This document shows positions 6,989 to 63,545 of a stretch of DNA of 64,000 bases, piece after piece. Origin of the DNA: Octopus sinensis (taxonomy: Eukaryota). How positions within the stretch are numbered: position 1 is the stretch's first letter; each line of letters starts with the position of its first letter. A program made the position numbers and the translations under genes. Below the pieces are notes generated by a model. The model saw only the letters and a list, made by a program, of their open reading frames with translations, was not told the origin of the DNA and ran no database searches. The stretch spans positions 51,026,001 through 51,090,000 of the forward strand of contig NC_043008.1 in the NCBI RefSeq assembly GCF_006345805.1, written 5' to 3'.

Positions 6989-7539
6989 ATGTTTCTTTGT
7001 GTTTATCTCATGTTAGAATGTGATATCATTTGTTATAACTGTGTATTTGTGTGCGATTTTACTTTGTCATATGTTGTGACGTACTGTTGTAGATAATAAA
7101 TGATACCGTCAGATATTGTGTTTCCGCAGGTTATCTGGTCTTATAAATGGAATGTTTGAGTAAAGGTTGAGACAGATTCCAATAGAAAATCGTTAACTTA
7201 CCGAACCAGTTTCGTCTTCGTTCTTCAGGAGTTCTGCGATGAAGGTAATACCATCATGTCTTTTTTGTGTGTTTAGCATACATTATTGCGTGATATCATT
7301 TGTTGTTAGCGTGTATTCATGTGATTTTTATTTTATCACATATTGTGACATGCTGTGGTAGGTTATGAGTGATATAGTGTGATATCTTCTTTCCGCAGGT
7401 TGTCTTGTGTTATGTAAGGAATGTTATCACGGTGTGTCTCTGAGTAGATGCTGAAATAGAATCGAATAAGAAATCGTTGACTTACCGAACCACATTGGTC
7501 TTCGTTCTTCAGGTGTTCTGCGATGAAAGTAACACCATC
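6989..7539 (-). repeat. Old tandem duplication spanning the 3' end of the large nAChR exon, its donor site and the start of the intron
   Basis: Units 7256-7539 and 6989-7255. The second unit reads DGITFIAELLKNEDETGS|GTAAGT against the genic [18 protein letters not shown]|GTAAGT. Confidence 0.85.
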
Positions 7540-8542
7540 AATGGCTTCTTGTATGTCTTCTGCCATAACTCTTTGTTTCATACTGCTTGAGCTTTCGGAA
7601 ACCAGGGCCTCTTCATATGGGAAACGACCGAACGCTGATGGTGGAAGTGGTGACTCAGTATTAACCGCACGTCGAGCTATACGTTGGTAGGCCTTGTTGG
7701 TAACGTTATCTCGTACACCGATACTACCTAAGCTGGAAGTGCCGTCTTTTACTTCAATTCCATTACAGGTTCGAACCGATGCTCTAGAGGACTTGTCGTA
7801 TTCCAGATTTGGACGACGCATGATGAGCAATTTTGGTAGAATGCTGAGGAATACTCGCCTCACCCACGGACTCATAGTGTGTGTCCAGGGTGAGCGAAAG
7901 TGGACATTAAGAACTACAACTGTAACGATGATTGATAAAGTAACAAGAATCATGGTGAACAATAAATATTTTCCGATCAGCGGAACGACAATCGAAGTGG
8001 GCGGAATGATCTCTGCTAACAACAAGAAAAATACAGTTAAAGAAAGCAAAATGGAGATACACAGAGTAATTTTCTCACCACTGTCGGAAGGGAGGTAAAA
8101 TACCAGTACGGTTAGAAAGGAAATGGACACGCATGGGATGATCAAATTAACAGTGTAGAAAAGAGTCTTCCGCCTCATTGTTATGTTAAAGGTAATGTCG
8201 GGATAAGGTTCTGGACAGCATAAGTATCGTTTTTCGTTTTTCTTGGCCGGTACATCTAAAATGTCCCATTCAACACTTCGATATAATTCTCGAAGGTCCA
8301 TGCCTCTTTTTATCACCGTTTCTCCTTGTTCGTTTGGGGCACAGATATGCACAAGGTCGACCTGATTGCCGTCGTAAGTCCAGGAACCGAATTTCATGGT
8401 GCATAATTGAATATCGAACGGGAAAAATTCGACATCAATAGTACAGGAGCTTTTATAAATCGCCGGTGGCTCCCAAACGACCCGACCATCAGGATGCAGC
8501 GTGGCTTTGGTCATCAAAGTTACTTCATAATTTCCGTCTGCA
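7486..8542 (-). CDS. nAChR alpha-type subunit, large internal exon (loop E, Cys-loop, loops B/F/C, TM1-TM3, intracellular loop)
   Basis: Acceptor tttcAG at 8544-8543, donor TCG|GTAAGT at 7485-7484; 1057 nt, phase 2 to 0. Translation includes (N)[23 protein letters not shown], Cys-loop [36 protein letters not shown]1, SDSGEK, TM2 [24 protein letters not shown]3, and ends in [19 protein letters not shown]. Confidence 0.97.
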
Positions 8543-15680: not shown

Positions 15681-15886
15681 TAAATAATAATGAAATCAAG
15701 GATTAAAATAATAATAAAAATATTATTAATAAAGATATTCGGATTAATTTAAAATCATTTTAAAAAATGCTTTGTCACAATGCATTCATCTCGAATATGA
15801 TGAGGGTTATTTTTTGAACAAACTCATGCGTATGCGTCTGTGTGTATAAATATATGCAGCAGGTATATATAAACACACTTATACAC

Positions 15887-15925
<39 letters not shown>

Positions 15926-15927
15926 CG

Positions 15928-15974
<47 letters not shown>

Positions 15975-17876
15975 TATATACATACATATATACATGTGTG
16001 TGTATGTTGTGTGTGTATATGTGTATGTATTTGCGTGTGTTTTCCTTTGAGAATAATTGACTTTTCTGCGTTGATTTGCTAACAATTTGACGAGACATTT
16101 TGGTTTAAATCACGCTAGCACCAGCCAGCGATTGGTCAATACTGAAATGTAATTTGAAGTAGTCATATATATGGTTGTGTAATATGCTTGCGCTCATGTG
16201 TTGAGAGCACATCAACTTAGTACACATTTGTGCATTTGATTCTTCAAAAAAATCTAGTTGTGCATATATACCGTATATATACAGGTCATTGCACAAATCC
16301 CAGCAAGAAAACTAGAAATAAAAGATTCTGGGGGTGTTTTACAAATCGATCGGGTTTATTGCAGGATGGGGGTAGGCGTGCTTTTTTTATGGAGAGCACT
16401 AGTATTATATGTCCCTATATATATATATGAACTTGTGTACGTGTTTCTGGATATATATTTTGTCGAAATATAACGTTTACATCATAGTCTGATAAATTGC
16501 TACCCATTTCTTTTATGATATTATTTGATGCGATTTATTAAATTTGAATTTCAAAATACATCCTTTCCTTTTGGAGTTTGATGACGTTGTAATTCTTTTT
16601 CTTTCTGCAACAATTATAATTTATCAATTTAAAACACGACCTGAAATATTGGAATCGATTTTATCAACCCTCAACATCGGTAATATCATATACATATATC
16701 ATTTGAATTAACTGATTAATTTTGGATGAAACACTTCGGATCAATAATGGCGTATTCTCAGTAAAAAATGCGTAAATATCGCTTGAGCAATATATTACTA
16801 AGCTTCCTGTGTATCACAAATTTGATAAACTGTTCAATAACTTTATCATACTGCAATATCTCAAAACATATTTACATGTTTTTTAATGAATGAATATTTT
16901 GTAGTACTTTATCGACAAATTATATCTTTGTTAGAGACACACCTAGGAACTGTGCTTGTACACAAAAGACGGTAAAAAAGGTTTGGGGTTCTAACGTCTA
17001 CTTCTAACTTAACACAATATAGTTATGGTATGTTAATTGACACGACATATTTACATATCTTATTTGTAAATATGCCGAGTCAATAAAAAAATGTGTCTTT
17101 ATTTAAAGAATCTTAAAATGACTTCGTTTCTTATCGTAGTTAGTCGTTGATCATAAGTATTAGGCATCTCCACACCACAAAAGCTACTTACAAAAAACTA
17201 TACAACATTATAATACTGGATTACTGATATATGATAATTTCTTATTAGTGTCCTATATATATATTTTTTTGTAAACAAAGAAAATGTCACTTTGGGCGTG
17301 TTTAGGTATTTTCATATCACGAATTTACCGAACAAATAAACTATACGAGCTTGCATTATTATTACACTCAGAGTCCGTTTGGTTTCTTGCTCTGAATATA
17401 ACACTTTCCCGGCTAAATATCTGCAAATGATGAGGACAATTAACAAATTGATATTCGTTGTAACTAAATTGGTTGTTATTAACATTTATTTAACTTATAT
17501 TTGTTAGTTCTAAGTTACATAGACATATAGCTTATATATGTAATATACATACATACAGTTATTTGTATATATTATAGATATATGTTTGTATATATAAGAA
17601 CGTGTGTGTATATGTCTCAAAGATGTGCTGAAATAAGACATGAAACGATCGTAGTGGTTATTTATAATTGTTAAATTTCTAAATTTATATAAATTATTTT
17701 ATGTATTGGCTTAAGTCTTTCTTTGTTTGATTTGCATAATAGTGGTTTTGTCTCTAATTTTAATATAATATATATATATACATATATATATATATATTGG
17801 TACATAAAAAATTGTATTACTATAACAACATACATTACCAACAAATAGAAATAAAACGACAACAAAAAACATCTGC

Positions 17877-30675: not shown

Positions 30676-30680
30676 GTATC

Positions 30681-30713
<33 letters not shown>

Positions 30714-30819
30714 ATATATTATATATATCATATATATTTATTCATTTATTTATCTAAGTATGTATGAATTCCTCTATCTTTCTATCTAAAAGTATGTATG
30801 TGTATGTATGCATATACGA

Positions 30820-44972: not shown

Positions 44973-45620
44973 TATATATACATATATATATATAACTGCC
45001 GTAGGAATTTGGTTAGGCCATTACAGTGAAATTGTCGTGAGACCAACATTCTGTCAAGAGAATGTGACAAAATTATAATTCTTTAGAATACGGAAACTTG
45101 ACCCGAATGTACTTCTGCAATATAACATCAGCTACAGGCATCCAAGAAATATGCAAAAATATTTAATCCGAAGGGACAATTAGTTCTACTTGCTTCAGAA
45201 ATAATAATGAACACTGGTAATCCAGCTGCCGGCATTCGTTCACAAAGCATTGGTCCGAACAATAATGGTCCACGCAATGCTCTGGTAGAAGTAACTCGAA
45301 AAATAGGCCTCGATGTTAATGACCACCTGGACATAACAGTCCCACACACTTACATATACGCACATACACACCCACCCACAAACAAAGGGACATATATATA
45401 TATATATACACTATTTATGTATATATATTTATATATATATTCACATATATGCACATACATACGTGTATATATATGTACATATAAATAGTATATGTAAATG
45501 TATATACATATGTACATATATAAATACATGCATATATAATCTATTATATAAAATTGAAATATATGTATAGTTTTTATTTAATATATATATATAGCTATAT
45601 ATATATATATATATATTAGG

Positions 45621-45652
<32 letters not shown>

Positions 45653-45901
45653 ATATATTATATATATATATTGCAGGCCAATGTGAAAGAACGACCCCAC
45701 CCCCTCCCCCAAAACCCCAGAAAATGTGCAAAAATATATACAGAAATACAGAAAGAGGAAGTACAAAGGGAGAGACAAACGTTTAGATGCCATTTTATCT
45801 CATTAGATGATAGATTAAAATTAGTACCGTATTAAGTGATATTAAAAAAAAGAGAGAGAGTTTAAACAAAGATATAAAAGAGAAAGAGATTAAGAAGAAA
45901 G

Positions 45902-45941
<40 letters not shown>

Positions 45942-45980
45942 CCATAACCAGCAAAAAGAGGCAACACACGTCCAACTTAC

Positions 45981-46090
45981 TTGTTGAACAAGACCAAATC
46001 TGGCGTCCATATATCTGCAGCCGGAACTTCGATGGTTTTCAGACCTGCGTACTCGCTTGGGTTCCATTTCAGCCATATATCCCACCATTC
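45981..46090 (-). CDS. nAChR 110-nt loop-A exon, variant b (Phe); candidate mutually exclusive alternative
   Basis: ggtaaAG|GAATGG...AACAA|GTAAGT; exactly 110 nt with no stop; encodes EWWDIWLKWNPSEYAGLKTIEVPAADIWTPDLVLFN(N); 18/36 identical to variant a. Confidence 0.87.
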
Positions 46091-46241
46091 CTTTACCAAG
46101 ACCACAAGTTAAGAAAATTGTTGCTTTCAATTTGTCCACAAACAAATGCGAATGTGTATGTTTGTATATAATGCATATATTTATGTCTGTATGTATGTAT
46201 AGCACATATTATACACGTATATGTATATATATGCATGGATA

Positions 46242-46318
<77 letters not shown>

Positions 46319-46369
46319 TATATATACATATTATATATACATACATATTATATATATAATATATATATA

Positions 46370-46459
<90 letters not shown>

Positions 46460-48758
46460 TGTATGTATACATACATATATATATGGACTTATAGATAAAT
46501 AGACGGACGGAGAGACAACAGATAGACATACAGACAGATAGATAGATAATGAACCCTTTACAGTTAAATAGTGTGCAGTGTCAACTTCCGATATGCGATT
46601 ATAAGAATTATTCGAGATAACACATAATTTGAATTTGATTTTTTACTCTTTGCTTTGAAAGTATGTTAGAGTCTAAATATATGTAATTGCATACATAGGT
46701 GTGTATGCACGTATGAATGCATGTATTTATGCATAACCCGTTGGTTTTCATTCAGCGGAACTGAAAACATACCATTCTAAAGATTAGTTTTCGTTGTATA
46801 ATCCGGGTTTTTGAAATTTTTGCACGTAAAAATTTCCTCACACCGTGTGTGGCCTAATCTTTGCGGGAATGGAATTGGATGAATACTGTCTTATTTAAAT
46901 TGTATAAGAGTTCATGTTAAAAATGTAGGGAGTGGGAAAAAAATTATTATACAGCTTGAAAATAATAAAAAGCTATGCGAATGAAATTCTTACTTAAGAT
47001 TAATTATAATCAAACGTAAGAAAGAAATGAGAAACAAGCTGAAGTCTGGCGAGTACACTGATATCTGCTGATATATTTCATCCTCATGAGATCTCTTCAT
47101 CGAAGTGTAGCCTTAACAGTTCTTGTCCGACTATACATCGACTGAGATTTATGTAAATTTGGGGAGATTAAACTCAAACTTCTCTGAGTATCCATATTCA
47201 AATTTAGTCTTAAAGTTGTCTCCCTTATTATTTTTGTTTGACAGAATGTGTCTTTTTAAACTAATGATGTAAATTTAATCTATATAATAGATATGACTTG
47301 CTCCATTAAATACATCCGCGCCGAGTTAAATGTGCAGATGATGGATAATTTTTTGTATAATAGTTATTTACTATAGCTTTTATAAAGGCATAAAAGCTGT
47401 GAAGGATAATACATAGATTATTTCATTGGTGCGTCATCAGTCATCTGGTGAATCTACGAGAATCTACGAGAATCTACGAGAATCAACCCGATAAATGCAC
47501 CAGACTATAACAGACAGACTATACCCAGACTATAACAGAGAGCGGTTTCAACAAAAAAGTAATATGTCTGTGCATATATGTATATGACTATATATATCTT
47601 CGTGACTATTTGTGTCTATTTGTATTTATGAATGATTGCGTGCTTATAAGCAATGATCTTACACAGTCAAAAATTTCTAGGACGATACAACAAAAATATT
47701 ACTTAAAATATATACAAAATGAAAAGCTTTTATCTTAGATGTGACGGAGTAAGAGAAAAAGATATGAATGATATATGTCATAAAAAGAATATTTTATGAG
47801 TACTTATGGAAACACTGGTATACTTTTATGTTTTCATGTAAAGAGTTGAATGATGTTGGATATTACCAAGAAATGAAAGAACTCTAAGAGATCTATACAT
47901 GATTATACACGCATATATATATGCATATATTATATATGCACATATATATACACATGTATATATATATGTATATGTATATATGTATATGTATATATATACA
48001 TATATATTATAGGTATCTGTATTATATCTGAATATAGACATATATATTTATATATGAATACATATATGTGTGTATACATGTATATACACGTATATATATA
48101 TATATATATACATATATATACATATATATATATATATAGGTATTTTGCATATTATATCTGAATATATAGACATATATATTTATATATGCATACATATGTG
48201 TGTTATATTGTTATACACGTATATATATATATACATATAGACATATATATACATATATATATATATTATATATATATGTATAATATATATATATATATCT
48301 TTACACACACACACACACATAAGCACACTCACATCCACCCACACATAGAATCACACAGATTCTCGTAGACACCGTGTGTCTAACCAGATCATTCAGTCAT
48401 TCATTAATTCATTCGACTGTGAATAAAAAGAACAAGAACAGTGTTATGTATTATGTAGACAATATATAAAAGAAAGACTTTTAACAAATGGTCGACAATG
48501 ACTTGACAAGAAACACAATGAAAGCAGCATGCCATTTATCATCGGATTACTAAGTGTTGTGAGAATGTCTACAGATGTGTCATGATTCGATGTAATTGAA
48601 TTTCCGACATGTCATCAGGGGGTATCCATAAACACAGCCTTTCCTGTATATGTCTGTTGTGTGCGTTATATATATATATATATATAATATACATATATAT
48701 ATCTATATATATACATACATACATACATGCATACATACATGCATATATGTATATATAT

Positions 48759-57060: not shown

Positions 57061-57170
57061 TTATTGTATAGTACGATGTCTGGCAGCCAGAGTTCCACCG
57101 AGGGCACGTACAGTCGATTCACACCACCATATTCCTTCGGATTCCATCTTAGTTTGAGGTCCTGCCATTC
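57061..57170 (-). CDS. nAChR 110-nt loop-A exon, variant a (Tyr)
   Basis: ttgctttAG|GAATGG...AATAA|GTAAGT; encodes [36 protein letters not shown](N). Phase 0 to 2 joins in frame to the first T of the large exon, giving LYNNADGNYEV. Confidence 0.95.
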
Positions 57171-58829: not shown

Positions 58830-59968
58830 GGGGTTGGACAAAATAATGTCTTTTGATTTGTTGTTAGTGTTGCTTAAAATGCTTTGCTAAAATTGCTGTT
58901 TCTTTTCAAATATCATAAGAAAATAGTAATTAAAATTCATTAAAATGACAGATCTATCGGACTTTCAAAGTGGTCAAAGTGTTGGTGGTGGTATGGCCGG
59001 CGCTAGCACAACAAAAACAGCTGAAATGTTTGGTGTAGCAAGAAGTACTGTCTCGAAAGACTTTGGGAAAGAGGGAAAAACCTCCTCGTTGAAGCAAAAC
59101 TCCAGAAGAAAACCAAAACTTTCAGATAGGGACCGCCGGGCTCTTACGCCAATTGTTAGAAAGGATCACAAAAGTACTGATCCCCAAATTACTACAGAGC
59201 TTAATGACCAGCTTAAGAACCCAGTTTCCACAAAAACTCTGGGAGCTGCACAAAGCCGGATTTCAGGGGAGAGCTGCAATCAGAAAACCACTGCTTACAA
59301 AAACAATCGTTGTAAAGCGTTTAAAGTGGAGTAAAAACCTACAGAATTAATCCCCAGAGCAGTGGAAGAATGCTATTTTCTCGGATGAGTCATCCTTTAC
59401 CTTATTTCCCACCACCGGCTGAGTATACGTGTGGAGACAGCTAAAAGAAGCATTTGACCCAGACTACCTTCTTCCAGCATGAAGGAGGATCTGTGATGAT
59501 CTGGGGTGGTGTGAGTGCGATATCTTGGAAATGTTTTCCCGTCATGGCAGAATTAATAGTCAACACTATTTAAGCATTTTATCTGATCAAATTCATCCTA
59601 TGGTTGCGGAACTGTTTCCGTAGGGAAACGCAATCTTTCAGGATGATAATGCACCAATTCACACTGAATGGCACGGGGAACATTCTAGTGAAGTTGAACA
59701 TTTTATCTGGCCACCACAGTCCCCAGATCTCAATATTATTTAGAAAAACAAGTAAGAAGTCGATATCCTCGACCATCATCACTATAAGAACTGGAGACTG
59801 TTTTAGCTGAAGAATGGACAAAAATTCCTCTGGAAACAATTCAAACTTTGTACGAGTCCATACCTCGTAGAATTCAAGCGGTAATTACTTCCAAAGACGG
59901 TCCTACTCCATATTAAAATAAATTTGTCTGAAATTTTAAGGTGTTTCCATTATTTTGTCCAACCTCTG
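58828..59968 (+). mobile_element. Tc1/mariner DNA transposon, 1141 bp, with frameshifted transposase pseudogene
   Basis: TIRs caggggttggacaaaataatg / cattattttgtccaacctctg in a TA context; HTH region FGVARSTVSK; motifs WKNAIFSDESSF, GGSVMIWG, FQDDNAPIH, WPPQSPDLN, SIPRRIQAVI...GPTPY spread over several frames. Confidence 0.93.
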
Positions 59969-62987: not shown

Positions 62988-63097
62988 GCATACATATACA
63001 TAAGTCTGAAGCAATTAAAATGATGTCTATAGGCATTCGATAACATCAAACGGAAACCTGAGAGATTTGCTTTGAGATATATCTGTGTATATATGTA

Positions 63098-63155
<58 letters not shown>

Positions 63156-63545
63156 GCATACAAACATACGTATATATATATGTATATATATGTGTATGTA
63201 TGTATGTATGTGTATATATATATATATATTATATATATATATATTAATACAGATATACACAGATACACATTTATATCTCAAAGTAAATATCTCAGTTTTC
63301 CGTTAGACGTTTCTCGAAGACTGTATATTTTATCTTATTTGAACGTTTTTCCTTTTTCCCCACCTTATATTTTATGTAGACCCGCACAAAAATTGTACAA
63401 TGCCCGCATGTTGTCTCCTTGAAATATTGTTGTTGTTATTATTATTATTATTATTATATTATATTATTATTATTATTATTATTATAATTATTATTATTAT
63501 TATAATAATAATAATAATATAATTATTATTATTATTATTATTATA

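What the first reader, a model, noticed from the sequence alone, without database searches (positions are those of the whole stretch)
45981..46090. Variant exon b replaces the loop-A aromatic-box Tyr with Phe and adds two extra Trp
Seen: WTPDLVLFNN versus [10 protein letters not shown], and EWWDIWLKW versus EWQDLKLRW. Known: this Tyr corresponds to Torpedo alpha1 Y93, part of the principal-face agonist box; Y-to-F here lowers ACh sensitivity, and Phe occurs in non-alpha subunits such as insect beta1 (DIVLFNN). Loops B and C (WTYDG, YLCC) come from the shared exon and stay alpha-type. Inference: isoform b is a hybrid alpha subunit with lower ACh affinity or shifted ligand or toxin preference.
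Basis: partly seen in the sequence, partly recalled or inferred. Interest (0 to 1): 0.7.

Follow-up and report, generated by a model that had tools for sequence, protein, structure and literature searches.

The report
Octopus acetylcholine-receptor alternative exon 4b
This is a real alternative exon of an octopus nicotinic acetylcholine receptor alpha-subunit gene, already present in public annotation; it is one of two mutually exclusive 110-base exons found across molluscs, and its b version replaces a ligand-binding tyrosine with phenylalanine, with a functional effect nobody has measured.

Summary
On the minus strand, 45981-46090 is a 110-nt exon with AG/GT splice sites encoding EWWDIWLKW...WTPDLVLFN(N). 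A homologous 110-nt exon, 4a, lies at 57061-57170 and encodes EWQDLKLRW...WLPDIVLYN(N). The shared exon 5 (7486-8542) carries WTYDG and YLCC. The gene is the Octopus vulgaris/sinensis nAChR 'alpha-like 1'. Both isoforms are already in RefSeq/GenBank (4b: XP_029643578.1, CAI9731358.1). Including both exons, or neither, shifts the frame into early stops, so they are mutually exclusive. The a/b pair, in the order a then b and always 110 nt, is also present in Haliotis and Pecten genomes. It is annotated in oysters, limpets, Aplysia (both forms cloned as cDNAs), Pomacea, Biomphalaria and Mytilus. Intronless contigs from 103 cuttlefish-like sequencing runs carry 4b. Octopus-versus-cuttlefish dN/dS for 4b is 0.05. 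The Phe aligns with human alpha4 Y100 (Torpedo Y93). Phe marks 10 of 12 mollusc b-type exons compared; the extra Trp are cephalopod-only. The exon also encodes complementary-face residues (the equivalents of alpha4 R86 and beta2 K79), which also change. Lower ACh sensitivity is plausible but untested, and Y-to-F is not the only candidate cause. The finding is real and biologically neat, but not new.

The parts
45981..46090 (-). Exon 4b (110 nt): end of strand beta2, the beta2-beta3 loop, beta3, beta4 and loop A. It carries Phe in place of the loop-A Tyr.
   Evidence: Translation and splice sites. Identical to residues 100-136 of annotated isoforms P0121/P0123. dN/dS of 0.05 against cuttlefish.
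45986..45988 (-). TTC codon for the loop-A Phe (equivalent to Torpedo alpha1 Y93 and human alpha4 Y100).
   Evidence: Gapless alignment to 5kxi_A; index mapping; aromatic-box list in PMC11836552.
46073..46084 (-). Codons for exon positions 3 to 6 (W-D-I-W). They contain the two cephalopod-specific extra Trp, at positions 3 and 6.
   Evidence: Trp at these positions is seen only in octopods and the cuttlefish-like sequences among the molluscs compared.
46091..46125 (-). 3' splice region of exon 4b, with a non-consensus AAG acceptor. This is about 35 nt of intron conserved with cuttlefish.
   Evidence: blastn of L012 9933-10085 against window 46125-45973 gives 81% identity. The 4b acceptor is AAG in octopus, cuttlefish, Haliotis and Pecten, whereas 4a uses CAG or TAG.
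45975..45980 (-). 5' splice site of exon 4b (gtaagt).
57061..57170 (-). Exon 4a (110 nt), the Tyr-type alternative. It resembles the single exon of other phyla.
   Evidence: Identical to P0001 residues 100-136. 72% mean identity to annelid, nemertean and brachiopod sequences, against 56% for b.
7486..8542 (-). Shared exon 5 (1057 nt): loop E, Cys-loop, loop B (WTYDG), loop F, loop C (YLCC), TM1-TM3 and most of the cytoplasmic loop.
   Evidence: The 389-aa 4b+5 query is 95% identical to P0001, and the 18 residues by which the two isoforms differ account for this. Pfam LBD and membrane domains found.

Best explanation
Exon 4b is one of two mutually exclusive copies of exon 4 in the octopus neuronal-type nAChR alpha-subunit gene annotated 'acetylcholine receptor subunit alpha-like 1'.

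Shown here. The two exons are 110 nt each, are homologous, have canonical splice sites and lie 10,970 nt apart in the order a then b. Including both, or neither, shifts the frame into a stop within 5-7 codons. A productive mRNA therefore carries exactly one of them, joined to the shared exons 3 and 5. The pair arose by tandem exon duplication before the mollusc classes diverged, and b has stayed under strong purifying selection in cephalopods.

Inferred. Choosing b swaps a 37-residue cassette that changes 18 residues on both faces of the agonist site. On the principal face, the loop-A Tyr loses its hydroxyl (Y to F) and the residue next to the loop-A Trp changes (L to T). On the complementary face, beta3 changes R to T and Y to E, and a Trp is added at the end of beta2. 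The most likely result is a receptor population with reduced or shifted agonist sensitivity or efficacy, and altered ligand selectivity at interfaces where this subunit supplies either face. This would let one gene provide two pharmacological flavours of alpha subunit, selected by regulated splicing. The conserved weak AAG acceptor of 4b fits regulated use.

My confidence is about 0.97 that this is a real, used, mutually exclusive coding exon. It is about 0.55 that the b form has measurably lower ACh sensitivity.
For: Anatomy and frame logic.

Identity and annotation: the top hit is Octopus vulgaris/sinensis alpha-like 1. The same protein cluster holds 4a isoforms (XP_029643576.1) and 4b isoforms (XP_029643578.1, CAI9731356.1, CAI9731358.1), plus O. 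bimaculoides XP_014767957/8/9. The isoforms differ only at residues 102-134.

Use in mRNA of relatives: a 553-aa 4b-type protein is encoded without introns on roughly 3-kb contigs from 103 sequencing runs. Aplysia cDNAs AAL78648 (a) and AAL78649 (b) differ essentially only in this exon. Oyster Logan contigs of about 2.5 kb (presumably transcripts; not inspected here) encode the b form.

Conservation: dN/dS of 0.05 with pS of 0.62 between octopus and cuttlefish 4b. a/b pairs are annotated in 10 further mollusc genera. In Haliotis and Pecten loci the order is a then b, both 110 nt. Argonauta has 4a and 4b on one contig. No same-species a/b pairing appears in the NJ tree, and 11 of 12 b-type sequences group together.

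Residue mapping.

Effect of Y93F: PMC2217228.

Fold compatibility: in the AlphaFold model of the cuttlefish-type b isoform the exon-4b region has pLDDT 82-92, with beta2 ending at the first extra Trp. Its nearest solved structures are human alpha4beta2 and alpha3beta4.
Against: I could inspect no octopus transcript directly. No full-length octopus isoform is present in the transcript-derived part of the collection, so expression in octopus rests on the public gene models and on selection.

The single-origin tree is weak: bootstrap 0.15 for strict monophyly of b on 37 residues, with Patella b falling just outside.

Tyr at the loop-A site is retained or regained in the b exons of Patella and Mytilus, and Potamilus has Asp. 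Phe is therefore not essential to whatever b does.

At adult muscle sites Y93 contributes little to affinity (PMC4621750), so the Y-to-F effect could be small.

No functional data exist for either isoform.
Confidence: 0.85

Rival explanations
1. The a/b switch acts mainly on subunit assembly, partner choice or trafficking, or on the complementary-face pharmacology of interfaces where this subunit is the (-) partner. It would not act mainly through loss of the loop-A hydroxyl on the principal face.
For: The only invertebrate nAChR ligand-binding-domain exon pair with functional data, Drosophila alpha4 exon 4/4', changes assembly efficiency (cited in PMC2045683). 17 of the 18 differences are not the Tyr. 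Position 21 (Y to E) is never Tyr in the b exons of the 12 molluscs compared, and corresponds to alpha4(-)R86, a ligand-contacting residue. Position 19 corresponds to beta2(-)K79 at the pocket entrance. The b exons of Patella and Mytilus keep Tyr at loop A.
Against: Phe is present in 10 of 12 b-type exons compared, across three classes, which argues that it is part of the selected function. Y93F has a documented gating effect. The two explanations are not exclusive.
Confidence: 0.35
2. The two exons are functionally equivalent, and the pair is kept only to allow different transcriptional or splicing control in different cells.
For: No functional data exist. Both exons keep all the invariant structural residues: W2, D4, L7, W9, E13, Y14, P23, W28, P30 and the final NN.
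Against: b exons share derived states at ligand-site positions across more than 10 genera (positions 6, 17, 21, 35), and b is under strong purifying selection on its own sequence. Equivalent exons would be expected to drift or homogenise, not to keep distinct conserved identities.
Confidence: 0.08
3. 45981-46090 is a decayed exon copy, a fragment of another receptor gene, or an annotation artefact that is not spliced into mRNA.
For: It lies alone in a long, repeat-rich intron, flanked by microsatellites, and has a weak AAG acceptor.
Against: The frame is open and both splice sites are intact. dN/dS is 0.05 over a divergence at which synonymous sites are near saturation. The orthologous exon is spliced between exons 3 and 5 in intronless contigs from 103 runs. 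It occupies the same position in Haliotis and Pecten genes. No other receptor exons are nearby.
Confidence: 0.02

Closest known systems
The annotated isoforms of this same gene: Octopus sinensis XP_029643578.1 (4b) versus XP_029643576.1 (4a); O. vulgaris CAI9731356/8 versus CAI9731357; O. bimaculoides XP_014767957/9 versus XP_014767958
   Same: The exon 4b and 4a peptides are identical to the window's in O. vulgaris/sinensis, with one substitution each in O. bimaculoides.
   Different: Nothing at the sequence level. The database entries carry no functional or comparative statement.
Aplysia californica nAChR 'alpha 1' (AAL78648/NP_001191489) and 'alpha 2' (AAL78649/NP_001191490) cDNAs
   Same: Orthologous gene. 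The two cDNAs differ in the exon-4 cassette: a-type ...[11 protein letters not shown] versus b-type ...VWRPDVVLFNN. This shows both forms as cloned mRNAs.
   Different: They were deposited as two subunits rather than as splice forms. The Aplysia b exon lacks the extra Trp and has Leu, not Glu, at position 21.
Insect nAChR mutually exclusive exons (alpha6 exons 3a/3b and 8a/b/c; alpha4 exons 4/4')
   Same: [quoted passage not shown]
   Different: They affect a different part of the protein: alpha4 4/4' lies near the Cys-loop, alpha6 exon 3 near loop D (the latter from my own knowledge) and alpha6 exon 8 in TM2. None swaps the loop-A aromatic residue. The duplications are therefore independent.
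Engineered alphaY93F mutants of muscle-type nAChR
   Same: The same side-chain change at the same aromatic-box position. It lowers the diliganded and unliganded gating equilibrium (PMC2217228).
   Different: That is a single laboratory substitution in a vertebrate heteromer. Here the change is natural and comes with 17 other substitutions. At adult muscle sites Y93 is a minor affinity determinant (PMC4621750).
Vertebrate neuronal nAChR genes (alpha2-alpha6, beta2-beta4 type)
   Same: The closest solved structures are human alpha4, alpha3 and alpha6. The same gene layout applies: a 45-nt exon 3, a 110-nt exon 4 ending in ...VLYN|N and a large exon 5 (layout seen here; the vertebrate exon sizes are from my own knowledge).
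   Different: As far as I know, vertebrate genes have a single exon 4 with Tyr and no a/b alternative.
Lineus longissimus (nemertean) isoforms XP_064648314.1 and XP_064648324.1
   Same: Two annotated isoforms that differ only within the exon-4 cassette, at 8 residues.
   Different: Both are Tyr-type and much more alike (29 of 37 residues), so this is probably a separate, younger duplication. The genomic arrangement was not checked.

Membership tests
Nicotinic acetylcholine receptor alpha-type subunit (Cys-loop pentameric ligand-gated channel) | Neur_chan_LBD plus Neur_chan_memb domain architecture | tested here: met
   Pfam PF02931 (E = 5.5e-74) and PF02932 (E = 1.5e-75) on isoform b, P0123. 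PDB sequence search gives human alpha4 at E = 6e-118. Foldseek top hits are alpha4beta2 and alpha3beta4.
Nicotinic acetylcholine receptor alpha-type subunit (Cys-loop pentameric ligand-gated channel) | Cys-loop: two Cys separated by 13 residues | tested here: met
   [15 protein letters not shown] in exon 5.
Nicotinic acetylcholine receptor alpha-type subunit (Cys-loop pentameric ligand-gated channel) | Vicinal Cys pair in loop C (YxCC), the feature that defines 'alpha' | tested here: met
   RYLCCPEPY at 8215-8226 and flanking bases.
Nicotinic acetylcholine receptor alpha-type subunit (Cys-loop pentameric ligand-gated channel) | Complete principal-face aromatic box: loop A Tyr, loop B Trp, two loop C Tyr | tested here: not met
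   Loop B (WTYDG) and loop C (Y..CC....Y) are present. The loop-A position is Tyr in isoform a but Phe in isoform b. It remains aromatic but lacks the hydroxyl, so isoform b is an alpha subunit by the Cys-Cys criterion with a non-canonical box.
Mutually exclusive exon pair from tandem exon duplication | Two adjacent homologous exons of the same length and phase, with canonical splice sites | tested here: met
   110 nt each, ag|...|gt, 50% amino-acid identity at E = 2.9e-13, 10,970 nt apart with no other exon between them.
Mutually exclusive exon pair from tandem exon duplication | Joint inclusion or joint skipping is non-productive | tested here: met
   4a+4b+5 hits a stop 7 codons into 4b. 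Exon 5 read in phase 0 hits a stop after 5 codons.
Mutually exclusive exon pair from tandem exon duplication | Mature mRNAs contain one or the other exon | tested here: inconclusive
   Shown in relatives: cuttlefish-like intronless contigs with b and Aplysia cDNAs with a and with b. For octopus only gene models are available. No octopus transcript contigs were found in the collection.
Insect nAChR alternative exons (alpha4 4/4', alpha6 3a/3b) | Same position in the protein (orthologous exon) | tested here: not met
   Insect alpha4 4/4' differ near the Cys-loop (PMC2045683). The octopus pair covers beta2 to loop A, upstream of loop E. It is a functional analogue, not an orthologue.

The most novel reading that the evidence does not exclude
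The exon 4a/4b choice may be a mollusc-wide molecular switch more than 500 million years old. It would let one alpha-subunit gene make either a canonical high-sensitivity agonist-binding subunit (Tyr form) or a re-tuned one: Phe at loop A plus a remodelled complementary face, with added Trp in cephalopods. In decapodiform cephalopods the re-tuned form would be the predominant one. That would be a natural, splice-controlled edit of the nicotinic aromatic box, with cell-type-specific pharmacology in cephalopod nervous systems.
Probability: 0.3. Interest if true: 0.55.

Novelty: already known. Interest (0 to 1): 0.3.

Why it matters
The aromatic box of nicotinic receptors is among the most conserved ligand sites in neurobiology. 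Here, alternative splicing toggles one of its residues naturally, and most molluscs have kept that arrangement since before their classes diverged. This offers a ready-made evolutionary experiment on what the loop-A hydroxyl and the neighbouring complementary-face residues do. For cephalopod neuroscience it also means this gene yields at least two receptor flavours, which expression atlases and pharmacology should keep apart. It also explains several mis-annotations: Aplysia 'alpha1' and 'alpha2' are one gene, and the Argonauta and cuttlefish gene models are split or truncated at this exon. It is not a new kind of mechanism, and the isoform sequences are already public.

Tried and rejected
1. 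I looked for exons 1-3 and 6 in the window and found none. The window holds only exons 4a, 4b and 5.

2. A profile search with a 58-residue alignment of b-type cassettes, meant to find b-type exons outside molluscs, returned only 82 short fragments and no taxon names of use.

3. A 171-residue N-terminal query, meant to find octopus transcript fragments spanning exon 3-4b-5, found none. It did turn up the Argonauta exon 1-4a model.

4. Exact look-ups of Ostrea X1 and octopus CAI9731358 were not on record.

5. The cuttlefish locus L012 gives 9,967 nt upstream of 4b with no 4a. The octopus a-b intron is 10,970 nt, so whether decapodiforms retain 4a is undecided.

6. NJ trees on 37 residues give only weak support for a single b clade. 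The first Biopython bootstrap attempt timed out.

7. I considered homology with insect alpha4 exon 4/4' and rejected it, because that pair covers a different region.

8. Nine full-text searches found no paper describing this mollusc exon pair. Subscription-journal papers, such as the original Lymnaea and Aplysia subunit cloning papers, were not searchable.

9. Pfam on a transposase-looking ORF at 58930-59331 gave nothing.

Their placement is inferred from strand alternation only.

Full report
**What is in the sequence**

The finding lies on the minus strand. The reverse complement of 45981-46090 is a 110-nt open segment bounded by ...ggtaaag| and |gtaagt. It encodes EWWDIWLKWNPSEYAGLKTIEVPAADIWTPDLVLFN plus two bases of an Asn codon. 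The exon it was compared with is at 57061-57170. It is also exactly 110 nt with ag/gt borders and encodes [36 protein letters not shown].

A tblastn of either peptide against the whole window finds only the other (50% identity, E = 2.9e-13). Everything else is noise.

The shared downstream exon is 7486-8542. It starts with the base that completes the Asn codon. It encodes loop E, the Cys-loop, WTYDG, YLCC, TM1-TM3 and most of the cytoplasmic loop. Exons 1-3 and the TM4 exon are outside the window. The introns are 10,970 nt (4a to 4b) and 37,438 nt (4b to 5).

**Which gene, and is the exon already known**

A search with 4b plus exon 5 gives Octopus vulgaris/sinensis 'acetylcholine receptor subunit alpha-like 1' as the top hit, at 95% identity. 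The 18 residues by which the two isoforms differ, all in exon 4, account for the shortfall.

The members of that protein cluster include both isoforms:
- 4a: XP_029643576.1 and CAI9731357.1.
- 4b: XP_029643578.1, CAI9731356.1 and CAI9731358.1.
- O. bimaculoides: XP_014767957/9 (4b) and XP_014767958 (4a).

The isoforms differ only at residues 102-134. The window's 4b peptide is identical to the O. vulgaris/sinensis one. The variant exon is thus already in public annotation.

Argonauta hians has 4a and 4b on one contig, but its annotation is split into two gene models at exactly this point.

**Mutual exclusivity**

Both exons are 110 nt, which is 3n+2. Including both produces a stop seven codons into 4b. 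Skipping both puts exon 5 out of frame, with a stop after five codons. Only one-or-the-other mRNAs are productive.

**Is 4b used and selected**

A 553-aa protein carries the orthologous cassette EWWDVWLQW...TPDLVLFNN between the exon-3 and exon-5 sequences. It is encoded without interruption on roughly 3-kb contigs assembled from 103 public sequencing runs. Its exon differs by one residue from the Acanthosepion pharaonis genomic exon. Every member of that cluster that covers this region has the b form.

Between octopus and cuttlefish, exon 4b has pS = 0.62 but pN = 0.064, giving dN/dS of about 0.05. About 35 nt of intron upstream of its acceptor are also conserved.

I could not inspect any octopus transcript. 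Use in octopus itself therefore rests on the gene models and on selection.

**How old is the pair**

Isoform pairs that differ only in this cassette are annotated in these genera:
- Ostrea and Crassostrea
- four Haliotis species
- Patella
- Aplysia
- Pecten, Mizuhopecten and Argopecten
- Pomacea
- Biomphalaria
- Mytilus

The Aplysia 'alpha 1' and 'alpha 2' cDNAs (AAL78648 and AAL78649) are the a and b forms of one gene.

In the Haliotis and Pecten genomic loci the two exons are each 110 nt and lie in the order a then b, between a 45-nt exon 3 and the large exon 5. That is the same layout as in octopus.

No species' a exon pairs with its own b exon in a neighbour-joining tree. Eleven of the 12 b-type sequences group together, although support for strict monophyly is weak on 37 residues. 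One of the 12, Mya, comes from a protein that lacks YxCC and may be a paralogue rather than a b isoform.

| Comparison | Mean identity |
|---|---|
| a versus a | 77% |
| a versus annelid, nemertean and brachiopod sequences | 72% |
| b versus b | 59% |
| b versus those outgroups | 56% |

So a is the conservative, ancestral-like copy and b is the derived one.

The b exons share derived states:
- position 6 is never Lys;
- position 17 is Ile or Leu instead of Val, in 11 of 12;
- position 21 is never Tyr (Glu in 9 of 12);
- position 35 is Phe in 10 of 12.

At position 35, Patella and Mytilus have Tyr. A thirteenth b-type exon, from Potamilus, has Asp.

The two extra Trp (positions 3 and 6) occur only in cephalopods. 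Scallops have a different extra Trp, at position 1.

All four 4b acceptors examined are AAG, while the 4a acceptors are CAG or TAG. This points to a conserved weak site of the kind typical of regulated exons.

**Residue mapping**

The alignment to human alpha4 (5kxi_A) is gapless across the cassette. It places residues as follows.

| Octopus residue | Human alpha4 equivalent |
|---|---|
| loop-A Phe | Y100 |
| shared exon-3 Trp (NVW) | W62 |

PMC11836552 lists alpha4(+)Y100 and alpha4(-)W62 as aromatic-box members.

The same numbering shows that the cassette also encodes complementary-face residues.

| Exon position | Equivalent in human receptors | Change, a to b |
|---|---|---|
| 1 | alpha4(-)E66 | unchanged |
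| 19 | beta2(-)K79, alpha7 T76, at the pocket entrance | R to T |
| 21 | alpha4(-)R86, which contacts ligands at the alpha4-alpha4 site | Y to E |

These mappings rest.

Residues 62, 64 and 66 alternate towards the pocket. By that alternation, the first extra Trp (equivalent to alpha4 H68) probably continues that face above the pocket. This is inference only.

An AlphaFold model of the cuttlefish-type b isoform gives pLDDT of 82-92 over the cassette. Strand beta2 ends at the first extra Trp, the second lies in the turn that follows, and Phe is in beta4. Its nearest solved structures are human alpha4beta2 and alpha3beta4.

**What it probably does**

In mouse muscle receptors, alphaY93F lowers the diliganded gating equilibrium, mainly by slowing opening, and also lowers unliganded gating (PMC2217228). 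At adult sites, however, Y93 is a lesser contributor to affinity than Y190, Y198 and W149 (PMC4621750).

A reduction or shift in agonist sensitivity in isoform b is therefore a reasonable expectation. Its size is uncertain, and the other 17 substitutions, several at ligand-facing positions of the complementary face, are equally good candidates.

The only functionally studied analogue is Drosophila alpha4 exon 4/4'. That pair affects assembly efficiency and lies in a different region, near the Cys-loop (PMC2045683).

My best reading is a splice-selected retuning of both faces of the binding site. Altered assembly or partner choice is a live alternative.

**Novelty**

The mechanism, mutually exclusive duplicated exons diversifying an invertebrate nAChR ligand-binding domain, is well known from insects. 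The exact isoform sequences are in RefSeq and GenBank.

I found nothing in nine full-text searches that describes this particular exon pair, its mollusc-wide conservation, or the fact that it toggles an aromatic-box residue. The survey of lophotrochozoan nAChRs does not discuss splicing (PMC6896357). Subscription-journal papers were not searchable.

I rate the feature as already known at the sequence and annotation level. It carries a modest, testable functional question.

Noticed in passing
window 7155-7275 (minus strand), about 220 nt downstream of exon 5: A copy, roughly 80% identical, of the last ~70 nt of exon 5 plus the first ~45 nt of the following intron, with the GGTTCG|gtaagt donor intact. 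It has no usable acceptor, and reading it in frame after exon 5 gives an immediate stop. It looks like a relic of a local tandem duplication (a pseudo-exon).
   Followed up: partly
window 46088-46090 and 57168-57170 acceptors; L009 23734/24558; L011 22597/24070; L012 9968: Every exon 4b examined (octopus, cuttlefish, abalone, scallop) has a non-consensus AAG acceptor, whereas every 4a has CAG or TAG. A weak 3' splice site appears to have been kept for the b exon across mollusc classes.
   Followed up: partly
window 45844-45941 (minus strand: CT-rich, 40-135 nt downstream of the 4b donor); L012 10105-10260: A (CT)n/pyrimidine-rich tract follows the exon 4b donor in octopus. Cuttlefish also has pyrimidine-rich stretches downstream of its 4b. 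This could be a binding platform for a splicing regulator, or just a microsatellite. Long (TA)n arrays flank the exon at 45392-45671 and 46218-46484.
   Followed up: no
P0017 / P0397 (Lineus longissimus XP_064648324.1 / XP_064648314.1): A nemertean orthologue also has two annotated isoforms differing only inside the exon-4 cassette (8 residues, both Tyr-type). Duplication of this exon is therefore either older than molluscs or recurrent.
   Followed up: partly
P0009 (Potamilus streckersoni); P0150/P0151 (Patella); P0044/P0185 (Mytilus): The loop-A position of the b exon is not fixed. It is Asp in a unionid mussel and Tyr in limpets and Mytilus, while position 21 is never Tyr in any b exon.
   Followed up: no
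P0052, P0060, P0062, P0074, P0076, P0179-P0182 (Mya, Mactra, Dreissena and relatives): Heterodont bivalve relatives carry only a b-like, Phe-type cassette and lack a YxCC motif by a simple pattern test. They may be a non-alpha paralogue descended from the b form.
   Followed up: no
P0379 + P0122 (Argonauta hians); P0003 (Acanthosepion pharaonis, L012): Gene models break at this exon pair. Argonauta is split into an exon 1-4a model and a 4b-onward model. The cuttlefish model starts inside exon 4b and has an unrelated C-terminal tail.
   Followed up: partly
window 15884-16007, 30680-30802, 45452-45569, 63089-63212; L012 8207-8331 and 40918-41070: A repeat of about 125 nt occurs at least four times in the window, and in the cuttlefish locus at 79-89% identity. 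It is an interspersed element family shared by octopods and decapodiforms.
   Followed up: no
P0121 versus P0123 (C-termini ...CYSVGH versus ...CYSSYTS): The octopus gene also has alternative C-terminal ends, encoded outside the window, which combine with exon 4b in the annotation.
   Followed up: no
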